From the NCBI RefSeq assembly GCF_902713615.1, contig NC_052168.1, positions 4,712,001 to 4,776,000 on the forward strand: a stretch of DNA of 64,000 bases. Reading direction: 5' to 3'. Positions 6,101 to 63,351 of the stretch are shown here, piece by piece. Both the position numbers and the translations under genes were made by a program. Source of the stretch: Scyliorhinus canicula. Taxonomy: Eukaryota. The notes beneath the pieces are model-generated. The model searched no databases. It was not told where the DNA came from and saw only the letters and a program-made list of their open reading frames with translations. Each line of letters opens with the position of its first letter. The stretch's first letter is position 1.

Positions 6101-6253
6101 CTAATTGACATCCATGTACTGCTCCAAAATGGAGAGGAAGCTGGAGGAGGAGAGAGTGTCGGAGACCTGGAGATCGACATTCTCACTCTGCAGCGAGGAT
6201 GCTCCCACGCCGTGCGCCAGTTCGTGTAATAATTTGAAGATCACAGGCGTCAC
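6101..6253 (-). CDS. IRF3: IRF3 last coding exon ([50 protein letters not shown])
   Basis: ttgtttag acceptor, phase 0; GASSL and DLQVS match human IRF3 GASSL(S385/386)...DLHIS; TAG at 6103-6101. Confidence 0.93.
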
Positions 6254-7308
6254 CTAAACAAGGGGGGGGGGGGAGGGGATAAAATTCATCAGTACAGAAG
6301 CTGGAAACGGGGTGGGGGGGGGGGGTTATACATACATGAACTTAAAGACGGCAGGTCTCAGTAATCGCTGCATTCACAAAGCACCTCGTCGCACCTTTCA
6401 AACATCCCACGTCACTTCAAATACCCTTCTCAAACAAAACTAGCTCGCGAGGGATATTTAAAAAAATCTAATTTTAGAGAATCCAATTCTTCATTTCCAA
6501 TTAAGGGGCAAGTTAGCGTGGTCAATCCACTTGACCTGCACATCTTTGGGTTGTGGGGGTGAAACCCACGCAGACACGGGAAGAATGTGCAAGCTCCACA
6601 CGGACAGTGACACGGGGCCTGGATCGAACACAGGTCCTCGACGCCGTGAGTGCAGCAGTGCTAGCCACTGCGCCACCAGGCTGAATGGCCTCCTTCTGTT
6701 GCTAATCTCAATTATGTAGTTAGACCAAGAAAGGAAATGAATATTGTGTGGAGGTTTTCAGTGGTGATAATAATAACAATAATCTTTATTATTGTCACAA
6801 GTAGGCTTACATTAACACTGCAATGAAGTTACTGTGAAAATCCCCTAGTCGCCACATTATTCGGGTGTGTACCGAGGGAGACTCTGAGATTGGCGTTGAG
6901 AAGAGGCGAGAGAGCACCAGGGTGGGTGCGTAGCACAAGTGGCTAGCACTGTGGCTTCACAGCGCCAGGGCCCCAGGTTCGATTCCCCGCTGGGTCACTG
7001 CCTGTGCGGAGTCTGCACGTCCTCCCCGTGTCTCCGTGGGTTTCCTCCCACAGTCCAAAGACGTGCAAGTTGGGTGGATTGGCCATGGTAAATCACCCTT
7101 AGGTGACCAAAAAGGTTAGGAGGGGTTATTGGGTTTTCGGAGATGGGGTGGAAGTGGAGGCTTGAGTGGGTCGGTGCAGCCTCGATGGGCCGAATGGCCT
7201 CCTTCTGCACTGTATGATCCATATTCATTAGTGGGGACAGTGGGGCGAGGATGAAGTTAAGAGGTGAGTTGTTTGCCTCACTGTGATATTACCACAAGTT
7301 GGCCTTAC

Positions 7309-7430
7309 CTGGACCATGATCATCTTTTTATTCCAGGGTTTATGGTCAGGGTCGGGCCAGAGTTCCCCGAAGCAAAGCCAAATGGAGTAGTTTGGAGAGC
7401 AAGCCGAGGTTTCCAGAAATGCCTGTATTT
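7309..7430 (-). CDS. IRF3: IRF3 coding exon 7 (EIQAFLETSACSPNYSIWLCFGELWPDPDHKPWNKKMIMVQ)
   Basis: ctccacag acceptor / gtaagg donor, phase 1->0; resembles human [28 protein letters not shown]. Confidence 0.93.
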
Positions 7431-7639
7431 CTGTGGAGGAAGGTTTAGAATATTTACTGTACTCTTATCAGCTCTGCCATCTCAGTGAGGTCATTGGCGA
7501 TCTGCAGCATCCTTTAAACAGCCTCTAACAATCGGCACTTATACCAGCGGCCGGCTCGAGGACTCGACGTGGGTTCCTCGAGACTTCCCCCTTGTACGTT
7601 GTCTGTGCGCTCTGATCTCCCCACGGCCCTGGGAACTGT

Positions 7640-8248
7640 GGGCAGCATTCTCTCAGCCCAGGGTCAGGCCGGAGAATCCACGTGACCGGCGCAAATCGGA
7701 GAATTGGCACCGGCGTGGTTGGCGAGGTGTCGGTCAGGGGCCGCTCTACGCGCCCCCCCCCCCCCCCCCCTCCTCCCCCCCACACCACCACCACCACCCT
7801 CCACCACCAATTCACGGCCCAGGTTGGGCTGAGCTGCCGTCGTAAAATACCCCAGGGGAGGGGATCCAACCCCGGGGGGGGGGCTCCATCGTGGCCTGGC
7901 CCGATCGGGGCCCACCGATCGGCAGGTCAGCCTCTCTGGCTGGGGGCCCTCCTTTCTTCCACGCCGGCCCCTGTAGCCCTGCGCCATGTTGCGTCGGGGC
8001 CGGCGCGTTGAAGGCAGCCACTGCGCGTGCCCGCGTTGGCGCCGGTGCCATTGCGCACGCGCGGATCCCGCGGCGCCCAGTCCACGCCAGGTTCAGCAGC
8101 TGGAGCGCCGTGGATCGCTCCAGCGCCGTGCCGGCCCCCCTGTAGGGGCCGGAATTGCTGGTCCTGAGGCCGTGGCGACGCCGTCGAGAAACACGACGCC
8201 GTTTCCGACGGCATCAACACTGAGCCTCAGGATCACAGAATCCCGCCC
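7640..8248. mobile_element. GC-rich MITE-like element (related copies at ~42111-42660 and ~44878-45628; smaller relatives at ~5870, 8605, 11085, 28271, 36290)
   Basis: Imperfect terminal inverted repeats gggcagcattctc / agaatcccgccc; internal similarity between copies. Confidence 0.65.
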
Positions 8249-8848
8249 TGGATTCTTTCAAACTGAGGCAACTTTTAAAGGGTTATTTCATGAGAAGTGG
8301 GCGTCGCTGGGCATTTGTTGCCCATCCCGAATTGCCCCTTGAACTGAGAGTCTCGCTCGGCCATTTCAGAGGGGGGGGCAGTTAAGGGTCACCCACATGT
8401 CTGTGGGTCTGGAGTCACATGTAGGCCAGACCGGGTAAGGACGGCAGATTTCCCTCCCTGAAGGGACATTAGTGAACCAGGTGGGTCTTTCCGATAATTG
8501 ATGATTACTGAGACTAGCTTTTATATTCTTGAGTTCAAAAAAATTTGATAAAACTGATCCCAATTGTGCCCCACCCTGACTTGACAAACTCTTTGAATCA
8601 TACGGTGGGATTCTCCGTTTTCTGGTGTGACGCTCCCCCACTGGCAGAGGGACTCTGCGTCCCAGCGGGGGATTCCCATTGTGGGCACTCCCCAACGCCG
8701 TGGGGAAATCCCCGGGGTGAATGCGCCACCGGCAAAGCGGAGGATCCTGCTCCAGGATGTCTAAAGTGTGACTTGAACGATGTGACTTGTTGTCCAGCAG
8801 ATGTCTCAACGTAACTACGAGTTGAATTTTATCATCCCCGGCACTCAC

Positions 8849-9217
8849 CGTTAACAAATGTCTGCAGATCGTACAGGACCGTGAAGTCCCTGTTGGAGAT
8901 CTGCTGAGGTTCACAACTGTCGGGATATTCCGTCATTGTCCAGAAGCCTCTGCAGCCCCCAAGCCTCCGCCCGCAGATCTGAGTGTTCTGTACCTCCAGT
9001 ATCAGCCCTTGGTCCATGCGATCCAGCAGTCTTTCCGTGTACTTGATTTGTCGCTGGTCACTAACCGGTACGGCCGCGGGCGCCGGGAACTGGACATCCT
9101 GCAGGTGGGGGAAGGTAGATGCCGAGCTGTAGAAAAGGCGGAAGCCGTTGGGGTTTTTCACAACTTGCTCCTGGACCTTCTTCCCGCGATAGAAGACTTT
9201 CACCTCAAAGTCGGTAA
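8849..9217 (-). CDS. IRF3: IRF3 coding exon 6, IRF-association (SMAD/FHA-like) domain
   Basis: cccacag / gtgagt, 369 nt, phase 1->1; TDFEVKVFYRG...DQRQIKYTERLL...CGRRLGGCRGFW. Confidence 0.93.
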
Positions 9218-10496
9218 CTGTGGGGGCACAAGTTTGCGTGAATACTTAACCCACCCGCACATCGTATTAACTGCAATCTTGGACTGATGTGCCTCATTTC
9301 AGCTCCAATGGCCACCCTCACACCTTGTAAAGCATTAATCATACCGCAGCGTAGAGCCTGTTCAAACTCAACACCTTTTCATCCATCAATTTACGGTTAC
9401 TCCTTCCATGGTCAGCCCAGGAGAATGATACCTGCACTCCCAAGGGTTAAGTTACGAGGAGAGGTTATGTAAACTAGCGTTGTGCACCCTGGAAGCAGAG
9501 GGTTAAAGGATAACGTGAGTGATGTCTTCACAGCACAGTGGTTAGCACTGTTGCTTCACAGCGCCGGGGTCCCACGTTCGATTCCCTGCTTGGGTCACTG
9601 TGTGCGCGGGGTCTGCACGTTCTCCCCGTGTCTGCGTGGGTTTCCTCCGGGTGCTCCGGTTTCCTCCCACAAGTCCCGAAAGACGTGCTTGTTGGGTGAA
9701 TTGGACATTCTGAATTCTCCCTCCGTGTACCCGAACAGGTGCCTGAATATGGCAACTAGGGGATTTGCACAGTAACTTCGTTGCAGTGTTAATGTAAACC
9801 TACTTGTGACATTAATAAAGATTATTATTATTAATATTAAGATAGTTTCAAGAATTGACAGGGTCGATAGAGAGACACTAAGTTGGGGAGTCTGCAACTA
9901 GGGAGAAGAGTCTAAAGATTAGACCTTACAGGAGTGAAATTGGGAAACATTTTTACACATCGAAGATTGAAATTCAGTCCCTCAAGTGGACATTAGACCA
10001 ACTGTTAATTCGAAATCTGAGATTTCTAGATTTTTGTTAACTAAAGGGAAACGGGGTGAAGGCAGCTCTCTGGAGTTAGGTCGCAGGCCAGCCCGGTTCT
10101 CGTTGAATGGTGAAAGGGGCTGAATGGCCTACTGCTGCTGTATTGCTAAGCTGTGTTTGTGCTCCGGGCTGTTACTCTTTTCTCCCTGTGAAGCAAAATT
10201 TTTAAAAATGTTTAGCTAGCACCGATTCAGTTTACAGGATGTTGCGAACTTCGTTACAGTCGACTTTTGAAATGTCCCCAGTGCCTTCAAGCCGCCAGTG
10301 AGCACGCAGTGAGATCGGCGGACAGCAGCGAGATGGGACAGGCTGTTTTTGACAACATTGGCTGAGGACACTGTACTGACCAAGGACACTGAATGCGCCC
10401 CTCTTCCACATTGTCCCAAGAATATTTCACTGAGAGAGTGGGCAGGGAATTAACCGAGCCACCCACCACCAAAAGGTCAGAACAGTTCAAACTAAC

Positions 10497-10733
10497 CAAG
10501 TGCGCCATTTGAAATGAATTCCTTCATCTGCGTTTCAAAGTCGCCAATGTTTGGGATCACGATGTTGGGGTATCCGAATGGAGACGGCATCGCGCACGCG
10601 GCCCCTTCACCCACGCCGGGGTACGTGAGATCTGCTTGGCTCATATCTCTTGGCGACGTAGTGTAGTCTGGAGAATAGTGGAGGGGACTGAAAGACATGT
10701 CTGCCTCCATCAGGGAGCCTTGTCCATCGTACT
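10497..10733 (-). CDS. IRF3: IRF3 coding exon 5 (linker, EYDGQGSLMEADMSFSP...EFISNGAL)
   Basis: attttag / gttagt, 237 nt open, phase 1->1 consistent with neighbouring exons. Confidence 0.8.
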
Positions 10734-11772
10734 CTAAAATGAGAAAGAGATGACGTTAGATCAACCTGCAGGATTTCCCCCCCGCCTGTCACTCTCTCAC
10801 CCGGTGTGAGGCGACTGGGGGAAGAGTTCAACGGCTGCTCCCAAATCCAGAGGACCCCCCCCCCCCCCTCTCTGTGGTAGAACTATAATGCACCAATTGG
10901 GCACCATGATCGGTCCATTTCCAAATTCACTGACTCCTGAGAAATTCAGTCAGACTGGAGCAGGGCTCAGACTAATTCAGTCACTCTAATCCGTTAGAGG
11001 CGGAACGTGCAGTGCTGCAGTTTTCAAACGGAAGAGTCCTTCTTCTCCGCAGACGCTCTTCTTCCCATCCTCACCAAGACCCTGGGCGGAATGTCCCCTC
11101 TCGCCGGCCGGTCAATGGGGTTTCCCATTGTGGGGGCAGCCCCACTCCATCGGGAAACCCCCCCCCGGGCAGCCGGTAAAACGGAGAATCCCAACGGCAG
11201 AGAATCCCGGCCCCTGTATTTCACCTCCGCCCTCCTCGGGCACTGCATTGGGCGGAAGGCAACAGTTTAAAATCCCACGCATACGCACCCTCCTCACTCA
11301 TGGTCCTCCGGATTGACCAATCGTACTGTCCCTTGATCGTGCTCAAGCAACTAGAGTGGGAACTGACCCACGACCTTCTGAGCCCGAATCTAGAGGGTTA
11401 GCCACTGAGTGGGAAAGGGCCATCCGTAACCAATAGGGGAAAAGCAGACCAATTGTTCCTGATGGATGTGGACAACCTGCCCAACTCCCTTGTGGTCTAG
11501 CGTGACTTGCCAAGTGCACTGTCTGGTAGGTCTCGTGTTAGATTCTGGCATTTCTGGCCGGGGACTTAGCTCTTGAGGTGTGGGGAAATGATAGGGAGGG
11601 GTGCTCAAACTGACCGCAGTCCCCCCCTTAAACTGCGACGGTAATAATCCATGGTTGAGCCACCCTTTTATTGGGGGTGCGTTTTGCGAAGAGAGGCCTG
11701 ACCAAGGCTTCAGTGCCCTCACGGAATAAAAGCCTGAAATAGGAAGGGAGCAAAGAAAACACCATCGTGTAC

Positions 11773-11824
11773 CTGGTGGTTGGTCAAATATTGTCATGTC
11801 GCTCAAGCTGTCTTCGAGGATTTC
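11773..11824 (-). CDS. IRF3: IRF3 coding exon 4 (EILEDSLSDMTIFDQPP)
   Basis: ttccatcag / gtacac, 52 nt, phase 0->1; required to reconcile the phases of the flanking exons; resembles the IRF3 NES-like segment (human DILDELLGNM). Confidence 0.75.
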
Positions 11825-12002
11825 CTGATGGAAGATGCAAGAAGATTATTCCACAGGCACGCAAGACAGAACACAACCCTGATTTCAACAGTGATTTCAT
11901 TGACCGCATTCCTTCGCCCTCAAATCTACCCACTGGCGAATGGGAAGGGAACGTCTAGGGCCGGTTGATTACCGCGACATTTTACGATCTACCCTACTGG
12001 AA

Positions 12003-12530
12003 GGAGTGCCACACTCCCAGAAGGACGTGGAGGCTTTAGAGAGGGCGCAGAAGAGATTTACCAGGATGCTGCCTGGTGTGGAGGGCGTTAGCTATGAGGA
12101 GCGGTTGAATAAACTCGGTTTGTTCTCACTGGAACGACGGAGGTTGAGGGGCGACCTGATAGAGGTCTACAAAAATATGAGGGGCATAGACAGAGTGGAT
12201 AGTCAGTGACTTTTTCCCAGGGTAGAGGGGTCAATTACTAGGGGGCATAGGTTTAAGGTGCGAGGGGCAAGATTTAGAGGAGATGTACGAGGCAAGTTTT
12301 TTTACACAGAGGGTAGTGGGTGCCTGGAACTCGCTGCCGGAGGAGGTGGTGGAAGTAGGGACCATAGTGACGTTTAAAGGGCATCTTGACAAATACATGA
12401 ATAGGATGGGAATAGAGGGATACGGACCCCGGAAGTGTAGAAGATTTTAGTTTAGACAGGCAGCATGGTCGGCACAGGCTTGGAGGGCCGAAGGGCCTGT
12501 TCCTGTGCTGTACTTTTCTTTGTTCTTTGT
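12003..12530 (+). mobile_element. CR1-clade LINE 3' fragment
   Basis: ORF2 C-terminus DVEALERAQKRFTRMLPG...LRGDLIEVYK and the typical tail gggccgaagggcctgttcctgtgctgtac. Confidence 0.9.
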
Positions 12531-12980
12531 TTGAATCGGCAGCCTGGGGCTCTATCATCCAGAACGTTGAGGCGACCGAGTGACCTCTCTAAATTTCTGA
12601 AAGGGTTCGACGGGCACGGAGAAAACGTTTCCGCCCGTGGGCAAGGCTGGAAGGTCATCGATATAAAATTGTCACTAACGAATCCAACCGGGGCTTCATT
12701 AGAGAGCTCTTTACCAGAGAGTGGGGAGAATGTGAAACTCACTACTCCCAGAATTGGATTTGAGCGGAAGGTGGATATGAACTCATGAGGGGGGAAAGAA
12801 TGGGAGGACGTGTTGGTGGGGTTTTGATAAAGAGTGCAGGTTGGGGGAGGGGGGCGGGGGGGGGGGGGGGGGGGGTGGAGCAGGACGGTCTGGGTCGGTG
12901 TTGTGAAGTTCGATGTGAGATAAGGAACGTTCCAGGACACGGCGCTACATCAGTTAAATTGTGACATGGACTTGCGGTAC

Positions 12981-13072
12981 CAGGTTTGGAGGTGTACTGG
13001 CAGGGAGACCAGGGCTGGTGTTGCCAATCGCTGGGCTGATTTCCTCACTCTCCTCAGCACTGGCCCCCGGGC
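12981..13072 (-). CDS. IRF3: IRF3 coding exon 3 (GPGASAEESEEISPAIGNTSPGLPASTPPNL)
   Basis: ctctgtag acceptor, gtaccg donor, phase 1->0; S/P-rich linker. Confidence 0.72.
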
Positions 13073-13169
13073 CTACAGAGACAGAAAATTCAACAGAATT
13101 AACTTTATAAATAGGGACAATTCGTAGGTTTCCTGTTTGTTCCATGTCAGCAGTAATGGAACGTTTAGG

Positions 13170-14540
13170 TTTCGACCATAAGCCGTCAGAGCAGAAGCAG
13201 GCCATTCGGCCCATCGAGTCTGCTCTGCCATTCAATGAGATCCTGACTGATCTGATGTGATAATCTTCAACTCCACTTCCCGCCATATCCCCTCAACCCT
13301 TGATTCCCTTACTAATTAAAAATCTGCCTATCTCAGCCTTGAACATACTTAACGCCCCAGCCTCTACAGCTCTCTGCGGTACAGAATTCCACAGATTCAC
13401 TCCCCTCTGAGAGAAGAAATTCCTCCTCATCTCTGTCTGAAATGGGTGACCCCCCCCCCCTCACTCTGAGATGATGCCCTCTGGTCCCAGACTCTCCCAC
13501 AAGAGGAAACATCCTCTCAGCATCGTCCCTGTCAAACCCCCTGAGAATCCGATACGTCTCAATAAGGTCGCCTCTCATTTTTCTAAACTCCAGTGAGCAC
13601 AGGCCCAACCTACTCAACCTCTCCTCGTAAGAAAGTTCCTACACACCCGGGAGCGACCGAGTGAATCTTTGTTTGCCCTTTGTTATATCTGAGGTGTGGA
13701 TTCAGGTCGATAACGAATCCTGACAGATCCCATGAGGGGTTATCGAGCTGAACAAAGAACAAACTAGCATAGGAACAGGCCCTTCGGCCCTCCAAGCCTG
13801 TACCGGACATGATACCAACCTTGGCCAAAACCTTCAGCACTTCCTTGTGCCGTATCCCTCTACACCCATCCTATCTATGTGTTTGTTAAGATGCCTTTTG
13901 AACGCCGTTAATGTATCTGCTTCCACAACCTCCCCTGGTAACGAGTTCCAGGCACTCACCTCCCTCTGTGTAAAAATCCTGCCTCACACATCTCCTCTAA
14001 ACTTTGCCCCATGGACTTTCAACCTATGCCCCCTGGTGACTGACCCCTCCACCCTGAGAAAGAGTGTCTGCCCATCCACTCTATCCATGCCCCTCATAAT
14101 CTTGTAGACCTTTATCAGGTCACCCCTCAACACCTGTCATTCTAACTAAAATAGTCCGTGTCTATTCAGCTTCTCCGCATAGCTAACACCCTCCAGACCA
14201 GGCAACATCCCGGTAAACCTCCTCTGCACCCTCTCCAAAGCCTCTGCACCCTCTCCAAAGCCTCCACGTCCTGTGTGGCGACCAGAATTGTGCGCAATAT
14301 TCCAAGTGTGGCCGTACCACGGTTCTATACAACTGGAGCATGACTTGCCAGTTTTAATACTCAATGCCCCGGCCAATGAAGGCAAGCATTCCGTATGCTT
14401 TCTTGACTACCTTGTCCACTTGTATTGCCACTTTCAAAGATCTGTGGACCTGCACGCCCAGATCTCTCTGACTTTACATATTCCTAAGAGTTTTGCCATA
14501 TATAGTATATTTTCCCTCTATGTTAGATCTTCCAAAATAC
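13170..14540 (-). mobile_element. Two CR1 LINE 3' fragments (about 13170-13670 and 13750-14540)
   Basis: RKMRGDLIETYRILRG and ALERVQRRFTGMLPG motifs; CR1 tails. Confidence 0.88.
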
Positions 14541-14689
14541 ATGACTCGTTTATCTCTTTCTCTCTCTTTGCGGATTCTGTCTGATGTGAGTGTTCCCAGC
14601 ATTCTCTCTAACCATTCCCCCAACAAACATCTGCAATGACTCGGATATCTGGGTCTGAAGGTCATAGCTCCCAGTTCCATTCTACATAG

Positions 14690-14935
14690 TGAGAAGTCTG
14701 ACAACACCAGGTTAGAGACTTAATTATCTGCAAAGACTCGCATTCGAAATATTGTCTTGCGTTTTTGACTTTGTCTATATATATACATGTTTCTGGAACC
14801 CAGCTCTTCATTCACCTGAGGAAGGAGCAGTGCTCCGAAAGCTAGTGATTCGAAACAAACCTGTTGGACTTTAACCTGGTGTTGTAAGACTTCTTGCTGT
14901 GCCCACCCCAGTCCAACGCCGGCATCTCCACACCA
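14690..14935 (+). mobile_element. Penelope-like element terminal fragment with minimal hammerhead ribozyme
   Basis: tcac-CTGAGGA-aggagc agt gctcc-GAAA-gcta-gtga at 14812-14848; inverted partial copy at the left end (gaagtctgacaacaccaggtta). Confidence 0.7.
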
Positions 14936-14999
14936 CTCTGCATAGTCAGTGCAGCTGTGAGGGAGCACTAATGCTGGATCTGGGACTCTCACTACTCAC

Positions 15000-15171
15000 C
15001 AATACTCTGGATCTGATAAATCAGATGTGGGTTCTCTGAGGCATTCCTATTGTCCACCAATCTGCATAATTGCCTCTTCCGATTTAAAGCACTTCGAAAG
15101 TTTCTTTTCCATATGGCCGGGTCAGCAGAATTTATCCCTGGTTGGTACCTTCCACTTGCTATTGCCCAAGC
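15000..15171 (-). CDS. IRF3: IRF3 coding exon 2, second half of the DNA-binding domain
   Basis: ctgcag / gtgagt, 172 nt; AWAIASGRY...WKRNFRSALNRK is diagnostic for IRF3 (IRF7 has WKTNFRCAL). Confidence 0.95.
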
Positions 15172-15189
15172 CTGCAGAACATACAAAAT

Positions 15190-18100
15190 GTATTCATCCT
15201 CACCCTGCTGAATAAACAGTGACTCTGTACAGTTACACAGTGAGTGATCCTCACCCTGCTGAATAAACAGTGACTCTGTACAGTTACACAGTGAGTGATC
15301 CTCACCCTGAATAAACACTGACTCTGTACAGTTACACAGTGAGTGATTCTCACCATGCTGAATAAACAGTGACTCTGTACAATTACACAGTGAGTGATCC
15401 TCACTCTGCTGAATAAACAGTGACCCTGTACAGTTACACAGTGAGTGATCTTCACCCTGCTGAATAAACACTGACTCTGTACAGTTACACAGTCAGTGAT
15501 CCTCATCCTGCTGAATAAACACTGACTCTGTACAGTTACACAGTGAGTGATCCTCACCCTGCTGAATAAACAGTGACTCTGGACAGTTACACAGTGAGTG
15601 ATCCTCACCCTGCTGAATAAACACTGACTCTGTACAGTTACACAGTCAGTGATCCTCACCCTGAATAAACAGTGACTCTGTACAGTTACACAGTGAGTGA
15701 CCCTCACCCTGCTGAATAAACAGTGACTCTGTACAGTTACACAGTGAGTGATCCTCACCCTGCTGAATAAACAGTGACTCTGTACAATTACACAGTGAGT
15801 AATCCTCACCCTGCTGAATAAACACTGACTGCACAGTTACATAGTGAGTGATCCTCACCCTGCTGAATAAACACTGACTCTGTACAGTTACACAGTGAGT
15901 GATCCTCACCCTGCTGAATAAACACTGACTCTGTACAGTAACACAGTGAGTGATCCTCACCCTGAATAAACAGTGACTCTGTACAGTTACAAAGTGAGTG
16001 ATCCTCACCCTGAATAAACAGTGACTCTGTACAGTTATGATGTGGAGATGCCGGCGTTGGACTGGGGTGAGCACAGTAAGAAGTCTTACAACACCAGGTT
16101 AAAGTCCAACAGGTTTGTTTCAAACACGAGCTTTCGGAGCACGGCTCCTTCTTCACCTGAAGAAGGAGCCGTGCTCCGAAAGCTCGTGTTTGAAACAAAC
16201 CTGTTGGACTTTAACCTGGTGTTGTAAGACTTCTTACTCTGTACAGTTACACAGTGAGTGATCCACACCCTGCTGAATAAACAGTGACTCTGTACAGTTA
16301 CACAGTGAGTGATCCTCACCCTGCTGAATAAACAGTGACTCTGTACAGTTACACAGTGAGTGATCCTCACCCTGAATAAACAGTGACGCTGTACAGTTAC
16401 ACAGTGAGTGATCCTCACCCTGCTGAATAAACAGTGACTCTGTACAGTTACACAGTGAGTGATCCACACCCTGAATAAACAGTGACTCTGTATAGTTACA
16501 CAGTGAGTGACCCTCACCCTGCTGAATAAACAGTGACTCTGTACAGTTACACAGTGAGTAATCCTCACCCTGCTGAATAAACAGTGACTCTGTACAGTTA
16601 CACAGTGAGTGATCCTCACCCTGCTGAATAAACAGTGACTCTGTACAGTTACACAGTGAGTGATCCTCACCCTGCTGAATAAACAGTGACTCTGTACAGT
16701 TACACAGTGAGTGATCCTCACCCTGCTGAATAAACACTGACTCTGTACAGTTACACAGTGAGTGATCCTCACCCTGCTGAATAAACAGTGACTCTGAACA
16801 GTTACACAGTGAGTGATCCTCACCCTGCTGAATAAACAGTGACTCTGTACAGTTACACAGTGTGTGATCCACACCCTGAATAAACAGTGACACTGTACAG
16901 TTACACAGTGAGTGATCCTCACTCTGCTGAATAAACAGTGACTCTGTACAGTTACACAGTGAGTGATCCTCACCCTGAATAAACAGTGACTCTGTACAGT
17001 TACACAGTGAGTGATCCTCACCCTGAATAAACACTGACTCTGTACAGTTGCATAATGAGTGATCCTCACTCTGCTGAATAAACAGTGACGCTGTACAGTT
17101 ACACAGTGAGTGATCCTCACCCTGCTGAATAAACAGTGACTCTGTACAGTTACACAGTGAGTGATCCTCACCCTGAATAAACAGTGACTCTGTACAGTTA
17201 CACAGTGAGTCATCCTCACCCTGAATAAACAGTGACTCTGTACAGTTACACAGTGAGTAATCCTCACCCTGCTGAATAAACAGTGACTCTGTACAGTTAC
17301 ACAGTGAGTCATCCTCACCCTGAATAAACAGTGACGCTGTATAGTTACACAGTGAGTGATCCTCACCCTGCTGAATAAACAGTGACTCTGTACAGTTACA
17401 CAGTGAGTGATTCTCACCCTGAATAAACAGTGACGCTGTACAGTTACACAGTGAGTGATCCTCACCCTGCTGAATAAACAGTGACTCTGTACAGTTACAC
17501 AGTGAGTGATCCACACCCTGAATAAACAGTGACTCTGTACAGTTACACAGTGAGTAATCCTCACCCTGCTGAATAAACAGTGACTCTGTACAGTTACACA
17601 GTGAGTGATCCTCACCCTGCTGAATAAACATTGACTCTGTACAGTTACACAGTGAGTGATCCACACCCTGAATAAACAGTGACGCTGTACAGTTACACAG
17701 TGAGTGATCCTCACTCTGCTGAATAAACAGTGACTCTGTACAGTTACACAGTGAGTGATCCTCACCCTGAATAAACAGTGACGCTGTACAGTTACACAGT
17801 GAGTGATCCTCATCCTGAATAAACAGTGACGCTGTACAGTTACACAGTGAGTGATCCTCACCCTGAATAAACACTGACTGTACAGTTGCATAATGAGTGA
17901 TCCTCACTCTGCTGAATAAACAGTGACGCTGTACAGTTACACAGTGAGTGATCCTCACTCTGCTGAATAAAGAGTGCCTCTGTACAGTTACACTGTGAGT
18001 GATCCTCACCCTGCTGAATAAACAGTGACTCTGTACAGTTACACAGTGAGTGATCCTCACCCTGCTGAATAAAGTGACTCTGCACAGTTACACAGTGAGT

Positions 18101-18222
18101 GATCCACACCCTGCTGAATAAACAGTGACTCTGTACAGTTACACAGTGAGTGATCCTCACTCTGCTGAATAAACAGTGACTCTGTACAGTTACACAGTGA
18201 GTGATCCTCACTCTGCTGAATC
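15190..18222. repeat. Minisatellite, 48/51-bp unit (~55-60 copies), filling most of an IRF3 intron
   Basis: Unit atcctcaccctg(ctg)aataaacagtgactctgtacagttacacagtgagtg. Confidence 0.97.
16038..16238. mobile_element. Penelope-like fragment forming a perfect inverted repeat, inserted in the minisatellite
   Basis: 81-bp arms 16075-16155 / 16158-16238 with a 2-nt loop; same family as 14690-14935; hammerhead core CTGAAGA...GAAA. Confidence 0.8.
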
Positions 18223-18530
18223 AATGGATATGTTTTTTTTCCAAAAAAATGAATCATTTTTAGAATAACTTTAGAGTACCCAATTAATTTTTTCTAATTC
18301 AGGATCAATTTAGCGTGGTCAATGCACCTACCCTGCACATCTTTGGGTTGTGGGGGCGAAACCCATGCAGACACGGAGAGAATGTGCGAACTCCACACGG
18401 ACAGTGACCCGGGGCCGAGATCGAACCTGGGACCTCGGCGCCGTGAGGCAGCAATGCTAACCACTGCGCCACCGTGCCGCCCAGAAAATTAAATCGTAAA
18501 CATTTTGGAGAAATAGCAAATTGACGTTAC

Positions 18531-18694
18531 CTCAAATATCTTGGTATCTTCTGCAGAAATGTCCTGCCTCGATCCGTGTTTCCAAGGAATCCTGAACTGT
18601 GTTTTCTCTGCGTCTACCCAGTGGAGACCAGGGTAAAGCCCGCTGTTTATTGCTGGATGAGCCAATCACATATCAACGGCTTCTGGGAACCCAT
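18531..18694 (-). CDS. IRF3: IRF3 coding exon 1 (MGSQKPLICDWLIQQ/INSGLYPGLHWVDAEKTQFRIPWKHGSRQDISAEDTKIFE), with a 1-nt frameshift
   Basis: cccaacag|aATG, donor gtaacg; Trp-repeat IRF DBD (FRIPWKHG); 164 nt instead of 165, reading CAG CAA TAA near 18650. Confidence 0.92.
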
Positions 18695-52030: not shown

Positions 52031-52153
52031 CTCCAATACTGGAAAGGTGAAGAGGCACCTCAGTGACGGCGAGAACTCAACCCGTCCAGGTTCCCCGGCC
52101 ACGTTGCGGAATGTTCCGGAGTTACACGCAGCCCTCCAGCTCCCTGAAGGAAG
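52031..52153 (+). CDS. Secretin-family precursor exon 4: SNTGKVKRHLSDGENSTRPGSPATLRNVPELHAALQLPEG
   Basis: Pyrimidine tract + atatcag, donor gtgagt, 123 nt open in phase 2->2; dibasic KR. Confidence 0.75.
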
Positions 52154-54083: not shown

Positions 54084-54209
54084 TGAGGTGTACGAGCTCT
54101 CGCTGAGGAACCCGGATGTGTCGGCGGTGCTGGGTGAACTACTGAGGCTCCGCGGTTTAACACAGCAGCCCTGCCTGAGATGGTTCCGCAGTTACTACAG
54201 GGCGATGAG
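54084..54209 (+). CDS. Secretin-family precursor exon 5: EVYELSLRNPDVSAVLGELLRLRGLTQQPCLRWFRSYYRAM
   Basis: cattctgttcag / gtaagg, 126 nt; only the phase-2 frame is open. Confidence 0.75.
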
Positions 54210-57018: not shown

Positions 57019-57145
57019 AATTTTATCCGATGGCTCCCATTGGCCAGCTGCAGTTTTGATAGATCACCAGACTTGTGTGACCATCCGCCAGTTGGCAATT
57101 AACCAACAATTACAAACCTTCCTGACCACGATGGACTTTCAATAA
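57019..57145 (+). CDS. Secretin-family precursor probable last coding exon: ILSDGSHWPAAVLIDHQTCVTIRQLAINQQLQTFLTTMDFQ*
   Basis: CTGAC branch point near 56991, aatttcag acceptor, phase-2 frame open to TAA; supplies a second Cys; alternative terminal acceptor at 58589. Confidence 0.6.
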
Positions 57146-58450: not shown

Positions 58451-60445
58451 TGAGAGGGTGCTAAAGATCACCCATGATCTGATTGAATACCAGAACAGGC
58501 TTGAGGAGCTGAATCGCCTCTTCCTCCAGTTCCTCCTTTTCCTGTACCCACAGGTTTTGATCATTTCTTTTTGTGTTTTCTTTCACAGGCAGAGGGTGAT
58601 TGCGACCCCATGGGAGAGACCAACAGGACCTCAGTGAGGGTGACCTCTCCCTCCAATATCTACCCCTCGCCCCCTCCCTTAATAACCGTTACAACAGAAC
58701 CATTGCAAAGCTCGGAACAGGATTCCCGAGTTGTGGGCAGGATTGGGACCACGGAACAGCGCTCCCTGGCGTATATGAACCCTCGTTATTCTGTTAATTG
58801 TTCCTCCTTTCTGCTCTGCCCAGAGGATTCGATTCACCTTAAAACATTTCTCAACACCAACCCGTCTTATTTTGCAAGGTATGGGCGGCGATCAATTAAA
58901 TTCACTGACGTCAGCCCTCGCCCCCACCCCGGCACGGCCCTGAATTCCCCCCCCCCCCCCGTCCCCCCCCCCCCACCCCCCCACTAAAAACTCTACTCGG
59001 AGGAACACTGTGTCCTCATCAATGCCGGTTTTGGTGATCACGCCAGAATTAGCCTCTGCGCCACTGATCTAGGGGGGTGGGGGGGGGGGGGACAAGGAGG
59101 GAAGGTGGGGGGGGGGGGGGGATGTGGGGATGCAGACAACAGCCTGTCCTCATTCCGGCAAGCACTGCTATGAAGCACAGAGTGGTCGCCGGGGACAGGA
59201 CTCAGCTCTGCTGCGATGCCTTGTGTAGTTGAATTGCCTGCTGCCGCTAAATGGGGGTGGGGCGATGGAGCATTCCATCTGGAAGTGGAAGGGATGTGGG
59301 TGCTCAGGAGGCGACGGCATTAGTTCAATTACTTCCTGAAATCCTGCATTAAAAAGCGTGTGACAGGAATGGGTTTGGGCAGAGTAAATTAGGAGAAGAA
59401 GAGAGGCAAAGAGTAGGGCATTAACTGGATGGCTCGTTCAAACAGCCAGCACCGGATCGAGGGACCGAATGGCCTCCCTTTGTGCTGCTCGCTTTGAAAT
59501 ATTCCTATTAAAACTGACCGCGTCGGTGACCCTCTCTTCCAGAGATGCTGGTGGTGACACTAGTGACCATATGTGTCTGCCCCCCACTCCCCCCCCCCCC
59601 CCCGACCCCCAACCCCGTCCGCTCCCACCCTCAACCCCATCTCTATTGTTCATTCTATAATGGGGATGTCAACTCTGTAGAAACTGTGGACTGTCCCTTT
59701 AAATTATGTATTTTTAATTGCCATGGCGATGTTCTTGATACTGTTGTGTTCCATGATCTTGCCTAGCAATGATTCTACAGAACCACTGGTGACTTAGCCA
59801 GAACGATGTTTTATTAATATACACGTGGTTAAGTAATGATATGAATCTTATACAGACCGAATTATTACAGAGTTACTTTAGACTCTTCTGGAACTACCCT
59901 TATGTGCGACTGACCTCGTGTACGCCTTACTACCTTCCCATGCTGGACAGATGGCACCTGACTGATGTCTGACGCCACCTGCTGGTGGGAGGTTACACTG
60001 CTGTGTACATGTAATATTATCCACAGGCGTATCACCGCACATGTATGTATGAATTTTCTGTCCTATCTTCCACAACATGTTCTTTCCCTATCAGATTCAA
60101 GTGTGCGTTTATTTATTTCTCTGTGTTTATCTGAATCGCGCGCTCAATGATTATGTGAATTTGGCAGATTTTTTAGTGGCAGGCTAATAAAACGCAGTAC
60201 GATACCAAACAGAGACTGGCTTTGTTGTAATTTATAGACAGATTCGGGAATGAATTGACAGTGCCACAGCGTGTGTGAGAGTATGTGTACGGTAACGTAT
60301 CATAACAGCAACTGCCCCTGAAGCCACAGCACGATATTAAAACTCCCATCTTTATGCCACAATCCCTCTGCGTGCTCACCCCTCCCTATCTCTGTGACCG
60401 CCTCCACACTCCACAACGTCTCCGAGCTGCTCTGAATCTGGCCTT

Positions 60446-60980
60446 GGTGGTAGTCTTTGTGTTGCTGATTCAGGATGGTTGGGGTAGTGTTCACAAAGAC
60501 CACAGTATAGCTTTAACTGAGACAAAGCTGAAACAGGGGCTGGTTTAGCTCACTCGGCTAAATCACTGGCTTACCAAGCACCAGCCTCCCCGGACAGGCG
60601 CCGGAATGTGGCGACTAGGGGCTTTTCACAGTAACTTCATTTGAAGCCTACTCGTGACAATAAGTGATTTTCATTTCATTTCATTTTCGAGCTATGATTT
60701 TATTTCTACCACTAAACTGGGATTCGATACTTAGTCCTTAAGAATACACAATTGATCAATAACATCTCATCTATTCCTAATCTCACTCACTGGTACAAAC
60801 TATAATCTAACCTTCTCACACTATCGGCTCTGATGACCTTCACTAGCTATTTCCTGCAATACCCACCTCCCCTAAGGTCTAGCATCACTGCTTTATATAG
60901 TTGTATCAGTAGCTCCTCCTAGTGGCTACTCTCCACGCTACCTCAACTCTTGCAATGCTGATAATTGTGATTATATCACA
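60446..60980. mobile_element. Solo LTR-like insertion (with a SINE inside, ~60536-60688) splitting an L2 remnant
   Basis: GCCTT TSD, ...TCACA end. Confidence 0.65.
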
Positions 60981-61619
60981 GCCTTCTGAGCGTGCCCCGG
61001 TCTTCACCGCCGAACCGTTGGTGGCCGGGCCTCCAGCTACCCAGGCCCCGAGCTTTGGAATTCCCTCTCCGTCCCCTCCACCTCACCTTCCTTCTTTAAG
61101 ATGCCCCTTGAAAGCTGCCCCTTTGTCCGAGCGTTGGTCAGAACGCTGCCCATTTCCCAACAGTTGTTCAGTGCCACAGGACATGCTTTGTGTGAGGGGG
61201 GGAGGGTCCAATGTTCTCTCTCTCGCCTCGCCGTTATCTTTAACCGCCTAATTTTGGACGTTATTATTTTAGCCAACCAGGTAAGATGGTCGAATGGCCT
61301 CTTTCCATTTTGCAAGGTTTCATGCGAACTTCCCTCTACTTTACCCTACGTAGCCTCTATTGGCCCCTCAATGGGGATTACCTTGTTCCAATATCCACTT
61401 GTAATAAGTCATTGTATATTCCCATAATCCAATACATTCTTCTAAATTCCTCTCCTGGGACGATTTAGAAATTGCAGCTTGGTTATTGCTGATTCAGTCA
61501 GAACAAGGGGCTGGCTTCTCCAGTTTCCCCAACTGTGTGTCTCATAGAATCCCTACAGTGCAGAAGGAGGCCATTCGGTCCATCGAGACTGCACCTACCC
61601 TCTAAAGAGCACCCTAACC

Positions 61620-61998
61620 CAGTGTTTTTCAAACTATTTTCCCGGGGACCCATTTTTACCAACCGGCCAACCTTCGGGATCCAACCCGCCCGACCTTTGC
61701 GACCCACGCCGGCAAACTTGCGCGACCCACCATTTTCTCTTACCTTGTTTGTTGCTGACAAAAATGGTGGAAATGGTTCTGGGTCCCTTTGGCCCATCGA
61801 ACTTGAAAACAAAAGGCTGCAACCATATAAAAATTAATTTGGCCGCACTGCGCAATGGTGCCCGATCATCGGTGCGCATGCGCAGATCGATGATCAGGCA
61901 CCCATGCGCAGTGCAGCCGAATTGTTTTATCTGTCCCTGCCCATTTTGAATGCCGGTTGGTAAAAATGGGTCCCCGGGAAAATAGTTTGAAAAACTCT
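61620..61998. mobile_element. hAT (Charlie-like) MITE inserted in a V-SINE
   Basis: CAGTG start; perfect 44-bp inverted repeat 61624-61667 / 61952-61995; internal palindrome. Confidence 0.8.
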
Positions 61999-63261
61999 TT
62001 GCTGTATAAGGGAAAGTTTTTGCGTAGCCAATCCACCTAACCTGCACACGTTTGGACAGTGGGAGGAAACCGGAGCACCCGGAGGAAACCCATGCACTCA
62101 CCGGGAGAACGTGCAGACTCCGCACAGACAGTGACCCAAGGCCAGAATTGAACCCGGGACCCTGGAGCTGTGAGGCAGCAGTGCCAACCACTGTATCACC
62201 GTGCTGTCTCTGTTCTCAGCGGTGTACCGTTTGCTGGTGACGCGATTCCGGCTGGAGAATTCCGGCCAAGCTTCCGGCCCCTCCTTGTTCCGAAGCTTGG
62301 CCGCACCATAAACAGACTCTATTGATTTCTACTCTCTGTCCCTCAGAGAGGTCAGTGTTCTGATATTGTCCATCCATGCCATCTGGGCTCTTCCCTGTGT
62401 ACGTTTCCCAGGAGTTTTGCTTCACAGCGCCAGGGTCACGATTCCGACTCGGGTCACTGTCTGTGCGGAGTCTGCACGTTCCCCCTGTGTCTGCGTGGGT
62501 TTCCTCCGGGTGCTCCGGTTTCCTCCCACAAGTCCCGAAAGACGTGGTTGTTAGGTGGATTGGACATTCTGAATTCTCCCTCTGTGTACCCGAACAGGCG
62601 CCGGAATGTGGCGACGAGGGGATTTTCTTTTTTTTGAACTAAATTTAGAGTGCCCAATTTGTTTTTTCCAATTAAGGGGCAATTTAGCGCAGCCAATCCA
62701 CCTACCCTGCACATCTTTGGGTTGTGGGGGCGAAACCCACGCAAACACGGGGAGAATGTGCAAACTCCACACAGGCAGTGACCCAGGGCCGGGATTCGAA
62801 CCCGGGACCTCAGCGCCGTGAGGCAGCAGTGCTAACCACTGTGCCACCGTGCTGCCTTCTTCATTGCAGTACTAATGTAAGCCTACTTGTGACAATAAAA
62901 GATTATTACTATAACCCGGATGTTCGTGAACATGATTAACGTACAATTGACAGTCAAGGCCAGATACGGGAAGGAAGCACAGTCTTGGGAAACCTTCTCA
63001 AACATTCAAACCGAATTTGGCACCTCTGAGGGCCTCATAGGGTTAATAACTATTGAATGTCACACACACACACAGAGGACTGTGTCAGTGCTCTCACAGA
63101 TAAGATGGTTTCTCCCCTCCCATTTCTGTGATGTCAGTGCATGTCACAGGCAGAGAGAGAGAGAGAGAGAGAATTTCGCTGCTCCTCTCCCTAATCCCAG
63201 GATCAGGAAAGCTGGAGAGGCTGTGGACCCGGAGCATAAAGCTCTCAGTCTCCTTCTACCC

Positions 63262-63351
63262 ATGAAGATGGAACTAGACGTGTTGACGGACGTCCTCCAA
63301 ACCGGTGACCAGGAGGTGATACAGAAAGCCTTGCTTGAATTTAACAAAGAG
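63262..63351 (+). CDS. RIC8: RIC8 (synembryn, G-alpha GEF/chaperone) first coding exon MKMELDVLTDVLQTGDQEVIQKALLEFNKE; gene continues beyond the window
   Basis: Matches the RIC8A N-terminus (human [28 protein letters not shown]) with a phase-0 donor GAG|gtgagg at the equivalent position; acceptor at 63201; paralog identity not resolvable. Confidence 0.82.

What the first reader, a model, noticed from the sequence alone, without database searches (positions are those of the whole stretch)
6101..63351. IRF3 / secretin-like / RIC8 block mirrors the IRF7 / SCT / RIC8A region: possible ohnologs lost in mammals
Seen: the IRF here carries IRF3 signatures (WKRNFRSALNRK, GASSL) and neighbours a secretin-like gene and a RIC8 gene. 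Known: human SCT lies next to IRF7 on 11p15.5, where RIC8A also lies; human IRF3 (19q13.33) has neither SCT nor RIC8 nearby and is head-to-head with BCL2L12. Inference: this could be the whole-genome-duplication sister block, carrying a second secretin gene and a third RIC8, i.e. an extra ligand for class-B GPCRs.
Basis: inference. Interest (0 to 1): 0.82.

Follow-up and report, generated by a model that had tools for sequence, protein, structure and literature searches.

The report
Shark IRF3–secretin-like–RIC8 gene block
In the small-spotted catshark a real secretin-family hormone gene lies between IRF3 and a RIC8 gene, mirroring the IRF7–secretin–RIC8A region of other vertebrates, but whether it is an ancient duplicate or the shark's only, relocated secretin gene is still open.

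Summary
The window is Scyliorhinus canicula DNA. It carries an IRF3-type gene (minus strand, 18694-6101), a five-exon secretin-family prohormone gene (LOC119956275, plus strand, 48863-57145, with an alternative 5' exon at 42083) and the first coding exon of an annotated 580-aa Ric8-domain gene (63262-63351). There is no trace of CDHR5, DRD4, DEAF1 or PRMT1.

The same IRF / hormone / RIC8 order occurs in the basking shark, and hormone-then-RIC8 in the cloudy catshark. The elephant shark has a canonical secretin gene in DEAF1-DRD4-SCT-CDHR5-IRF7 (PMC12714231; the cadherin neighbour was confirmed here).

The duplicate-block reading is plausible (about 0.5) but unproven.
- No chondrichthyan species shows two secretin-type precursors, so "a second secretin / extra ligand" is not supported.
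- The RIC8 could not be placed as A, B or a third copy.
- Sequence tests pull in opposite directions.
- GASSL is not specific to IRF3. IRF3 identity rests on the WKRNFRSALNRK half of the DNA-binding domain and an NPHL motif.
- IRF3 carries a one-base frameshift at codon 16 in this assembly.

The scan had noted the hormone gene before, on this same window only.

The parts
6101..18694 (-). IRF3-type gene, coding part. Six coding exons: 18694-18531, 15171-15000, 10733-10497, 9217-8849, 7430-7309, 6253-6101. Conceptual product about 405 aa.
   Evidence: Pfam IRF and IRF-3 domains. PDB: DBD exon 2 scores 50.8 bits against IRF3 and 25.1 against IRF7. All splice sites are AG/GT, the frame is continuous, and there is no other stop.
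18647..18652 (-). One-base frameshift in the first coding exon of IRF3. It reads MGSQKPLICDWLIQQ then stop (TAA at 18649-18647). The DNA-binding domain continues in the next frame as INSGLYPGLHW...
   Evidence: Sequence read directly. Every other exon is intact.
15088..15111 (-). Codons for IWKRNFRS. The full WKRNFRSALNRK motif (15108-15073) is the IRF3-type recognition-helix segment.
   Evidence: The 12-mer is identical to human IRF3 in the PDB alignment, where IRF7 has WKTNFRCALRST.
6191..6205 (-). GASSL motif at the start of the signal-response domain. It marks the IRF3/7 subfamily, not IRF3 alone.
   Evidence: PMC7066157.
42083..42099 (+). Alternative first coding exon (MEAQTG) of isoform X2 of the hormone gene. 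It lies inside a repeat copy.
   Evidence: Exon mapping with P0030. 42040-42110 is about 80% identical to 8376-8445 and 3982-4044.
48863..48952 (+). Signal-peptide exon of the secretin-like gene (M at 48867 or 48891; ...MQVLLILTLLLQVAKPLPPN). Donor is CAG|GTGAGG, phase 2.
   Evidence: The basking-shark protein starts at the equivalent Met.
51042..51146 (+). Hormone exon: (R)HKR | HSDSLFTSELSKLRRTAVARNVINSILEAQM.
   Evidence: Pfam Hormone_2 28.5 bits. PDB: VIP 17.0 bits, secretin 16.8 bits. Exact match to XP_038639277.1.
52031..52153 (+). Exon 3. It encodes the tail of the predicted 38-aa peptide (SSNTGKV), the KR cleavage site, then HLSDGENSTRPGS..., a degenerate second peptide unit.
   Evidence: It aligns with the QLGDSMFTS... 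unit of C. milii SCT.
54084..54209 (+). Exon 4, carrying the first conserved cysteine (QQPCLRWFRSYY).
57019..57145 (+). Exon 5, carrying the second conserved cysteine (LIDHQTCVTIRQLAINQQLQTFLTTMDFQ) and the stop codon.
63262..63351 (+). First coding exon of a RIC8 gene (MKMELDVLTDVLQTGDQEVIQKALLEFNKE). The rest of the gene lies beyond the window.
   Evidence: Weak match to RIC8A Met1-Glu28. The annotated 580-aa PF10165:Ric8 gene starts exactly here.

Best explanation
The window is a piece of a small catshark chromosome. It holds three unrelated genes whose neighbourhood records genome history, not a shared function.

(1) IRF3, the interferon-inducing transcription factor.

(2) A secretin-family prepro-hormone gene.
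- It encodes a signal peptide followed by an R-H-K-R cleavage site.
- The predicted product is about 38 aa: HSDSLFTSELSKLRRTAVARNVINSILEAQMSSNTGKV, ended by a K-V-K-R site.
- It presumably acts on a class-B1 receptor of the secretin/VPAC type and raises cAMP.
- A cysteine-containing C-terminal part is conserved and has no known role.

(3) A RIC8 gene, encoding a chaperone/exchange factor for G-alpha subunits.

The most likely origin of the arrangement is that this is the IRF3-side sister of the IRF7 / SCT / RIC8A block, made by the two rounds of vertebrate genome duplication.
- The order RIC8 - SCT - IRF is kept in both blocks.
- The CDHR5, DRD4 and DEAF1 copies were lost here.
- On present evidence the shark gene is the only secretin-type gene of sharks. 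The likelier form of this reading is therefore differential retention: sharks kept the IRF3-linked copy, while chimaera and bony vertebrates kept the IRF7-linked one. An extra ligand is the less likely form.

Shown: the gene content, the exon structure, membership of the secretin precursor family, and the conserved order in three sharks. Inferred: peptide processing, the receptor, and the duplication history.
For: Gene content:
-.
- No cadherin, DRD4, SAND/MYND or PRMT1 motifs and no Pfam hits elsewhere in the window.

Same block in other sharks:
- Cetorhinus maximus: IRF 499 aa (-), hormone 190 aa (+), Ric8 550 aa (+) starting 6 kb downstream.
- S. torazame: hormone gene followed by Ric8.

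Canonical block elsewhere:
- C. milii SCT is followed 5.9 kb downstream by a cadherin gene.
- C. milii order is DEAF1-DRD4-SCT-CDHR5-IRF7-PHRF1; gar order is ric8a-deaf1-sct/drd4b-cdhr5b (PMC12714231 S3 table).

Duplication background:
- IRF3 and IRF7 are accepted 2R ohnologs, in paralogons 6D and 6C (PMC12220609).
- That paper states that 6D genes surround IRF3 in the great white shark.

IRF3 identity:
- DBD exon 2 scores 50.8 bits against IRF3 and 25.1 against IRF7, with WKRNFRSALNRK identical to human IRF3.
- The window has NPHL where bamboo-shark IRF3 has RPHL and shark IRF7 has DPHK.

The C-terminal half of the precursor favours an old split:
- C. milii against turtle SCT: 33.1 bits.
- C. 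milii against catshark: 24.6 bits.
- Catshark against turtle: no alignment.

Constraint on the peptide: the 27-residue core is 96%, 81% and 63% identical to S. torazame, Cetorhinus and C. milii. The rest of the precursor is 78-91%, 45-73% and 24-34%.
Against: - A phmmer scan of 1.84 billion representatives and a profile search of 5.8 billion proteins found only one secretin-type precursor per chondrichthyan species. No genome is shown to hold both copies.
- On the 27 peptide columns the shark peptide groups with C. milii peptide 1 (support 59/84). Forcing C. milii with the tetrapods costs 6.4 lnL (p-AU 0.096).
- The catshark and C. milii genes share all four intron positions and phases and 17 of 27 peptide residues. 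Plain orthology would explain this just as well.
- Whole-length identities do not decide: shark-chimaera 28-32%, chimaera-tetrapod 25-31%, shark-tetrapod 20-26%.
- The hormone gene is inverted relative to SCT in the canonical block.
- DBD exon 1 is slightly nearer to IRF7 (42.9 bits) than to IRF3 (39.6 bits).
- No SCAF1 was seen in the 6 kb 3' of the IRF.
- The RIC8 could not be classified.
Confidence: 0.5

Rival explanations
1. Plain orthologs that moved. The hormone gene is the shark ortholog of SCT and the RIC8 is RIC8A. In the elasmobranch lineage they came to lie on the 5' side of IRF3 through rearrangements, leaving CDHR5, DRD4, DEAF1 and IRF7 elsewhere.
For: - One secretin-type gene per chondrichthyan species.
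- Identical intron positions and phases in catshark and C. milii.
- 17 of 27 identical peptide residues, and a weak chondrichthyan clade.
- The spacer between the two peptide units is conserved: SSNTGKVKRHLSD against SSVNLGLSKRQLGD.
- RIC8 exon 1 resembles the RIC8A N-terminus.
Against: - It needs SCT and RIC8A to be cut out from between DRD4/CDHR5 and from beyond DEAF1, and then to land beside the paralogous IRF in the same relative order (RIC8 - SCT - IRF). That takes several rearrangements.
- The C-terminal half of C. milii SCT is closer to turtle and bird SCT than to the shark gene.
- No conserved non-coding matches were found between the C. milii SCT locus and the window; only interspersed repeats matched.
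Confidence: 0.33
2. Sharks hold this block in addition to a canonical SCT and RIC8A, so the hormone is a second secretin and an extra class-B ligand, and the RIC8 is a third paralog. This is a sub-case of the best explanation, so its 0.13 lies within that 0.5 and is not additional to it.
For: - The same synteny argument as the best explanation.
- Small peptide genes are often left unannotated; the shark gene itself is only 'uncharacterized' or 'hypothetical'.
Against: - No second secretin-type precursor was found in S. canicula, S. torazame, Cetorhinus or any other elasmobranch in two very large protein searches.
- The number of RIC8 genes could not be counted.
Confidence: 0.13
3. The IRF is really the shark IRF7. 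The window would then be the ordinary 11p15.5-type locus that has lost CDHR5, DRD4 and DEAF1.
For: - GASSL occurs in IRF7 too.
- DBD exon 1 scores 42.9 bits against IRF7 and 39.6 against IRF3.
- The order RIC8 - SCT - IRF would need no further explanation.
Against: - DBD exon 2 scores 50.8 bits against IRF3 and 25.1 against IRF7. WKRNFRSALNRK is identical to IRF3, and the IRF7 loop insertion is absent.
- The xPHL motif is that of bamboo-shark IRF3, whereas shark IRF7 keeps DPHK.
- It would require loss of three genes that are conserved at this locus from chimaera to human.
Confidence: 0.06

Closest known systems
Secretin precursor (SCT), especially Callorhinchus milii LOC121850333 / V9L9J8 and the two-peptide SCT-LP/SCT precursors of birds, turtles and marsupials
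   Same: - Signal peptide, a basic cleavage site, then an HSD-x-x-FTSE-x-SKL peptide.
- Five coding exons with the same four phase-2 intron positions as C. milii SCT.
- A second peptide-unit exon.
- A C-terminal part with two conserved cysteines.
- The nearest named cluster in the ESM Atlas is 'Secretin' (0.92).
   Different: - Genomic neighbours are IRF3 and RIC8, not DRD4 and CDHR5-IRF7.
- The peptide lacks the basic site after residue 27-29 and runs on to about 38 residues.
- Its C-terminal half (ARNVINSIL) is VIP-like; VIP and secretin score equally in PDB.
- The second unit has lost Phe6-Thr7.
- The 'ICP...L(I/V)AD(L/M)K' motif shared by chimaera, turtle and bird is replaced by 'TCVTIRQLAINQQ'.
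VIP / PHI precursors
   Same: Pfam Hormone_2, the HSD N-terminus and an NSIL segment.
   Different: - The precursor architecture differs, and the C-terminal exons have no counterpart in VIP genes.
- The peptide falls on the secretin side of the unit tree, with weak support (71/82).
IRF3 (19q13.33; paralogon 6D; neighbours SCAF1 and BCL2L12 in amniotes)
   Same: IRF DNA-binding domain, IRF association domain, GASSL, WKRNFRSALNRK, and a serine-rich C-terminus.
   Different: - The 5' neighbour here is the secretin-like gene followed by RIC8, not BCL2L12.
- There is a one-base frameshift at codon 16 in this assembly.
- The motif is NPHL, not DPHK.
RIC8A / RIC8B (synembryn)
   Same: The annotated product carries PF10165. 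Exon 1 aligns with RIC8A from Met1.
   Different: - Only 30 residues lie in the window.
- The products are 580 aa (catshark) and 550 aa (basking shark).
- The gene lies next to IRF3.
- Whether it is A, B or a third paralog is unknown.

Membership tests
Glucagon/secretin/VIP peptide superfamily (Pfam PF00123) | Hormone_2 profile match above the curated cut-off | tested here: met
   28.5 bits against a cut-off of 21.2, covering profile positions 1-27 of 28.
Glucagon/secretin/VIP peptide superfamily (Pfam PF00123) | Secreted prohormone: an N-terminal signal peptide and basic cleavage sites flanking the peptide | tested here: met
   Hydrophobic MQVLLILTLLLQVA segment, RHKR directly before His1, and KVKR after residue 38. 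No signal-peptide predictor was available, and processing is inferred.
Secretin (SCT) precursor family | Homology outside the hormone motif (the C-terminal part of the precursor) | tested here: met
   Catshark residues 80-195 against C. milii SCT 66-190: 24.6 bits, E 1e-4, including both cysteines. C. milii against turtle SCT: 33.1 bits. Catshark against turtle directly: no alignment.
Secretin (SCT) precursor family | The same exon-intron structure as a recognised SCT gene | tested here: met
   Five coding exons. All four introns are at homologous positions in phase 2, in both the catshark gene and C. milii LOC121850333.
Secretin (SCT) precursor family | Orthologous position between DRD4 and CDHR5-IRF7 | tested here: not met
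   Neighbours are IRF3 and RIC8. No cadherin or DRD4 sequence is in the window. C. milii SCT does have the cadherin neighbour.
Secretin (SCT) precursor family | Activation of the secretin receptor | not testable with these tools
   Needs a receptor assay.
IRF3 (as opposed to IRF7) | IRF DNA-binding domain plus IRF association domain plus GASSL (the IRF3/7 subfamily) | tested here: met
   PMC7066157 reports GASSL as unique to IRF3 and IRF7.
IRF3 (as opposed to IRF7) | Closer to IRF3 than to IRF7 in sequence | tested here: inconclusive
   DBD exon 2: 50.8 bits against IRF3, 25.1 against IRF7. DBD exon 1: 39.6 against IRF3, 42.9 against IRF7. The summed scores favour IRF3. The NPHL motif matches the RPHL of bamboo-shark IRF3. 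No full phylogeny could be built.
IRF3 (as opposed to IRF7) | SCAF1 on the 3' side | tested here: inconclusive
   No recognisable coding sequence in 1-6100. That flank may simply be too short.
RIC8 (synembryn) | Ric8 domain (PF10165) | tested here: met
   The annotated genes that start at this exon, or at the equivalent place, carry PF10165: S. canicula 580 aa, Cetorhinus 550 aa, S. torazame 440 aa partial. The domain itself lies outside the window.
RIC8 (synembryn) | Assignment to RIC8A, RIC8B or a third clade | not testable with these tools
   Only 30 residues are available. The search with exon 1 found no candidate.
2R ohnolog (paralogon) block | The same gene families in the same order in both blocks | tested here: met
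   RIC8 - SCT-type - IRF here and in two other sharks. Gar has ric8a-deaf1-drd4/sct-cdhr5b, and chimaera and human have SCT-CDHR5-IRF7.
2R ohnolog (paralogon) block | Both copies present in at least one genome | tested here: not met
   One secretin-type precursor per chondrichthyan species in the protein databases. This rests on annotation only; no genome-wide DNA search was possible.
2R ohnolog (paralogon) block | A gene tree with the duplication before the chondrichthyan-osteichthyan split | tested here: inconclusive
   Peptide units: the shark + chimaera clade has support 59/84, and the alternative is not rejected (p-AU 0.096). The C-terminal part points the other way.
2R ohnolog (paralogon) block | Further flanking genes of the 19q13 / 6D type | not testable with these tools
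   The window holds no other gene, and shark DNA beyond it could not be fetched (searches returned no DNA).

The most novel reading that the evidence does not exclude
Sharks carry the IRF3-linked 2R sister copies of both secretin and RIC8A, copies that were deleted in the ancestor of bony vertebrates. 'Shark secretin' would then be a hidden paralog and not the ortholog of mammalian secretin. The ancestral pre-duplication chromosome would already have had RIC8 - SCT - IRF side by side.
Probability: 0.5. Interest if true: 0.62.

Novelty: new member of a known kind. Interest (0 to 1): 0.5.

Why it matters
A fish secretin gene was only recognised in 2025, by bridging from zebrafish through gar to the elephant shark. 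No elasmobranch secretin-type gene has been described in the papers I could search. In the databases the shark genes are labelled 'uncharacterized' or 'hypothetical'.

If the block is the IRF3-side duplicate, three things follow.
- It would show that secretin had an ohnolog.
- It would date the RIC8-SCT-IRF linkage to before the vertebrate genome duplications.
- It would warn that shark and mammalian 'secretin' are not one-to-one orthologs, which matters for ligand-receptor co-evolution studies of class-B receptors.

If instead it is the relocated ortholog, it still supplies the missing elasmobranch secretin and a clear 38-residue candidate peptide for receptor assays.

Tried and rejected
- **Length limit on the homology search.** The search with RIC8 exon 1 inside its 280-aa open frame found no candidate. 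No RIC8 or IRF tree could therefore be built.
- **DNA not delivered.** DNA was not delivered for the S. canicula, S. torazame or Cetorhinus loci. The flanks beyond the window could not be read.
- **Frog secretin-like genes.** P0004 and P0010 are not on record by position.
- **Skate 'VIP peptides-like' gene (L002).** It has five PHI-like exons and no secretin-type C-terminal exons, so it is not the skate counterpart.
- **Conserved non-coding DNA.** A search between the C. milii SCT locus and the window gave only interspersed repeats.
- **ESM Atlas.** A look-up of the IRF association-domain exon could not separate IRF3 from IRF7.
- **Scan notebook.** It holds no note on RIC8, IRF7, CDHR5, DRD4, DEAF1, SCAF1 or BCL2L12 in this genome.
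- **Literature.** Nothing found on RIC8 paralog history or on a second secretin gene. The supplement of the paralogon paper (PMC8040251) is not held.
- **Rejected: other genes in the window.** The long open frames of 15.1-18.2 kb, 25.5-27.2 kb, 36.6-40.4 kb and 56.4-58.6 kb are translated minisatellites.

Full report
**What the window is.** The hormone gene's exons translate, without a single difference, to XP_038639277.1, 'uncharacterized protein LOC119956275 isoform X2' of Scyliorhinus canicula, on a 27.7-Mb record. The window is therefore small-spotted catshark DNA. It has no N runs. About 42% of it is repeated within the window itself, and it contains several large minisatellites. These minisatellites produce the 600-aa 'ORFs' of the mechanical list.

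**The IRF gene (minus strand).**
- Six coding exons with canonical AG/GT borders join into one frame of about 405 codons: 18694-18531, 15171-15000, 10733-10497, 9217-8849, 7430-7309 and 6253-6101.
- Pfam finds the IRF DNA-binding domain in the first two exons and the IRF-3 association domain in the fourth and fifth.
However, a survey of several hundred IRF3 and IRF7 sequences reports GASSL as conserved in both proteins (PMC7066157). GASSL therefore places the gene in the IRF3/7 pair, not in IRF3.
- What speaks for IRF3 is the second half of the DNA-binding domain. It scores 50.8 bits against human IRF3 and 25.1 against IRF7. WKRNFRSALNRK is identical to IRF3, and the IRF7 loop insertion is missing.
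- The first half of the domain is slightly nearer to IRF7 (42.9 against 39.6 bits), apparently because mammalian IRF3 is derived there.
- The motif that is DPHK in most IRF3 and IRF7 proteins reads NPHL here. The same paper reports RPHL for bamboo-shark IRF3 and DPHK for shark IRF7.
- I put IRF3 identity at roughly 0.9. No full tree could be made.
- The first coding exon has a one-base frameshift: MGSQKPLICDWLIQQ, then TAA at 18649-18647, with the domain continuing in the next frame. Everything else is intact. An assembly indel in an A-run or a very recent lesion are both possible.

**The hormone gene (plus strand).**
- The core gene has five coding exons: 48863-48952, 51042-51146, 52031-52153, 54084-54209 and 57019-57145. 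All introns are in phase 2.
- Isoform X2 adds a 17-base first exon at 42083. It lies in a repeat copy and is probably minor.
- The product has a hydrophobic signal segment, then RHKR, then HSDSLFTSELSKLRRTAVARNVINSILEAQMSSNTGKV, then KR.
- The exon passes Pfam Hormone_2.
- Against solved peptides it is as close to VIP (17.0 bits) as to secretin (16.8 bits). The N-terminal 14 residues are secretin-like and the C-terminal NSIL is VIP-like.

**Why the gene is secretin-type.** The rest of the precursor decides the family.
- A scan of 1.84 billion representatives returned a 97%-identical partial protein of S. torazame, then tetrapod secretin precursors and the elephant-shark secretin LOC121850333.
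- The catshark and elephant-shark genes share all four intron positions and phases.
- They also share a second peptide-unit exon and a C-terminal part with two conserved cysteines (24.6 bits, E 1e-4, without the hormone motif).
- The nearest named cluster by protein-language features is 'Secretin'.
- Within sharks the 27-residue core is the best conserved part of the precursor: 96% to S. torazame and 81% to the basking shark, against 45-73% elsewhere in the basking-shark comparison. That is what a bioactive peptide should show.
- The second unit (HLSDGENSTRPGS...) has lost the Phe-Thr core and looks inactive as a class-B ligand.

**The RIC8 exon.** MKMELDVLTDVLQTGDQEVIQKALLEFNKE, followed by GTGAGG, aligns with rat RIC8A from Met1, but only at E about 1. 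The proof is positional. The annotated S. canicula gene that begins 21,179 bases after the hormone gene's first codon, which is 63262, has a 580-aa product with PF10165:Ric8. Only this exon is in the window.

**What lies between the genes.**
- Motif scans for cadherin repeats, aminergic-receptor motifs, SAND/MYND and PRMT1 found nothing.
- A translated comparison with the start of C. milii CDHR5 found only repeats.
- Pfam scans of 20 further open frames gave nothing except weak retroviral protease hits at 24.0-24.3 kb and one sub-threshold DUF7729 match at 2.9-3.1 kb.
- The 29 kb between IRF3 and the hormone gene is decayed retroelement, SINE copies and minisatellites.

**The block in other species.**
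- Basking shark: an IRF gene (499 aa, opposite strand), the hormone gene (190 aa, 63-66% identical) and a Ric8 gene (550 aa) starting 6 kb downstream lie together.
- S. torazame: the hormone gene is followed by Ric8.
- Elephant shark: SCT is followed 5.9 kb downstream by a cadherin gene. The S3 table of Morash et al. 2025 gives DEAF1-DRD4-SCT-CDHR5-IRF7-PHRF1 there.
- Gar: ric8a-deaf1-sct/drd4b-cdhr5b. Human: RIC8A, IRF7, CDHR5, SCT and DRD4 all on 11p15.5.
- IRF3 and IRF7 are treated as 2R ohnologs (paralogons 6D and 6C). SCAF1 is the usual 3' neighbour of IRF3 and BCL2L12 its 5' neighbour in amniotes (PMC12220609).
- The shark order RIC8 - secretin-type - IRF3 therefore does mirror RIC8A - (DEAF1, DRD4) - SCT - (CDHR5) - IRF7. 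The hormone gene is inverted.

**Ortholog or ohnolog?** The evidence divides here.

For an old duplicate:
- The neighbourhood fits. Relocation would need several rearrangements that happen to rebuild the paralogous order.
- The C-terminal half of elephant-shark SCT is closer to turtle SCT (33.1 bits) than to the catshark gene (24.6 bits), and catshark against turtle gives no alignment.

For plain orthology:
- Neither the representative scan nor a profile search over 5.8 billion proteins found a second secretin-type precursor in any chondrichthyan.
- The peptide is 17/27 identical between catshark and elephant shark.
- On the 27 peptide columns the two group together (support 59/84). Forcing elephant shark with the tetrapods costs 6.4 log-likelihood units (p-AU 0.096), which leans that way without rejecting the alternative. 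Many of the shared residues are also those of VIP/PHI and may be ancestral.

Not decisive:
- Whole-length identities are 28-32% (shark-chimaera), 25-31% (chimaera-tetrapod) and 20-26% (shark-tetrapod).

**My weights.**
- Duplicate block: about 0.5.
- Relocated orthologs: about 0.33.
- The IRF is really IRF7: about 0.06.

**How it most likely works.**
- Shown: a gene with an intact frame in three sharks, a signal segment, basic sites and a constrained class-B-type peptide.
- Inferred: signal-peptidase cleavage, prohormone-convertase cleavage after RHKR and KVKR, carboxypeptidase trimming to a 38-residue non-amidated peptide, secretion from gut endocrine cells, and action on a secretin/VPAC-type receptor through Gs and cAMP.
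- A 2014 catshark transcriptome of pancreas, liver and brain found no secretin transcript (PMC4362833). That fits a gut-restricted gene but says nothing more.
- No functional tie between IRF3, the hormone and RIC8 is implied.

**Known or new.** The gene models exist in RefSeq and GenBank, but only as uncharacterized or hypothetical proteins. The papers I could search describe the elephant-shark gene only. The scan's own notebook holds one earlier first-reader note on the hormone gene, on this same window. I checked its extent and refined it. The gene is a new member of a known family, in a neighbourhood that raises a real evolutionary question which the window alone cannot settle.

Noticed in passing
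window 18647-18652 (-): IRF3 has a one-base frameshift at codon 16 (CAGCAATAAAC where CAGCAAATAAAC would keep the frame). All other exons and splice sites are intact. It may be an assembly indel or a very recent inactivation.
   Followed up: partly
window 15196-18221: A 3-kb minisatellite (51-base unit, about 60 copies, 87% matches) fills the intron between the two DNA-binding-domain exons of IRF3. It generates spurious 600-aa open frames on the gene's strand.
   Followed up: partly
window 56671-56978 and 57397-58462: The last exon of the hormone gene is bracketed by two minisatellites: a 35-base unit x 8.8 just upstream and a 17-base unit x 63 just downstream of the stop codon.
   Followed up: no
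window 36560-40407: Two adjoining, strongly strand-skewed minisatellites (50-base unit x 51 and 37-base unit x 36; GC skew down to -0.5) lie in the IRF3-hormone intergenic region.
   Followed up: no
window 23700-27500: A decayed retroelement (weak aspartyl-protease hits at 24.0-24.3 kb) is interrupted by a 14-base microsatellite of 86 copies (25552-26786).
   Followed up: partly
window 42040-42657 against 7906-8445 and 3982-4044: A GC-rich repeat family is present here. One copy, with a 33-base internal tandem array at 42369-42539, supplies the alternative first exon (ATG at 42083) of hormone-gene isoform X2.
   Followed up: partly
P0022 (C. milii SCT) residues 72-108 against P0003 (turtle SCT) residues 108-146: The elephant-shark 'second peptide' (QLGDSMFTS...AALLQHVQTFKR) aligns with a third, post-secretin unit of the turtle precursor (...KAFLHHVQNLRGS), not with turtle secretin itself. 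Tetrapod precursors may therefore hold three units. The Gln-starting unit conserved in fishes has a tetrapod counterpart.
   Followed up: partly
P0030 residues 139-195; P0022 137-176; P0003, P0011 C-termini: A C-terminal segment with conserved cysteines (C..WFR.Y and ID...C) is as well conserved among sharks as the hormone itself (65-73% catshark against basking shark). This suggests a second functional product of secretin precursors.
   Followed up: no
L002 (Amblyraja radiata CM021373.1, 61.11-61.15 Mb), exons near 11.4, 13.6, 16.2, 19.3 and 27.0 kb: The skate 'VIP peptides-like' gene holds five tandem PHI-like peptide exons and no secretin-type C-terminal exons. No other gene is called within 10 kb.
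   Followed up: partly
Cetorhinus maximus locus: The annotated basking-shark IRF gene range spans the whole hormone gene and reaches past the RIC8 start. In that model the hormone gene sits inside an IRF intron, and IRF and RIC8 would start head to head. This could be an annotation artefact.
   Followed up: no
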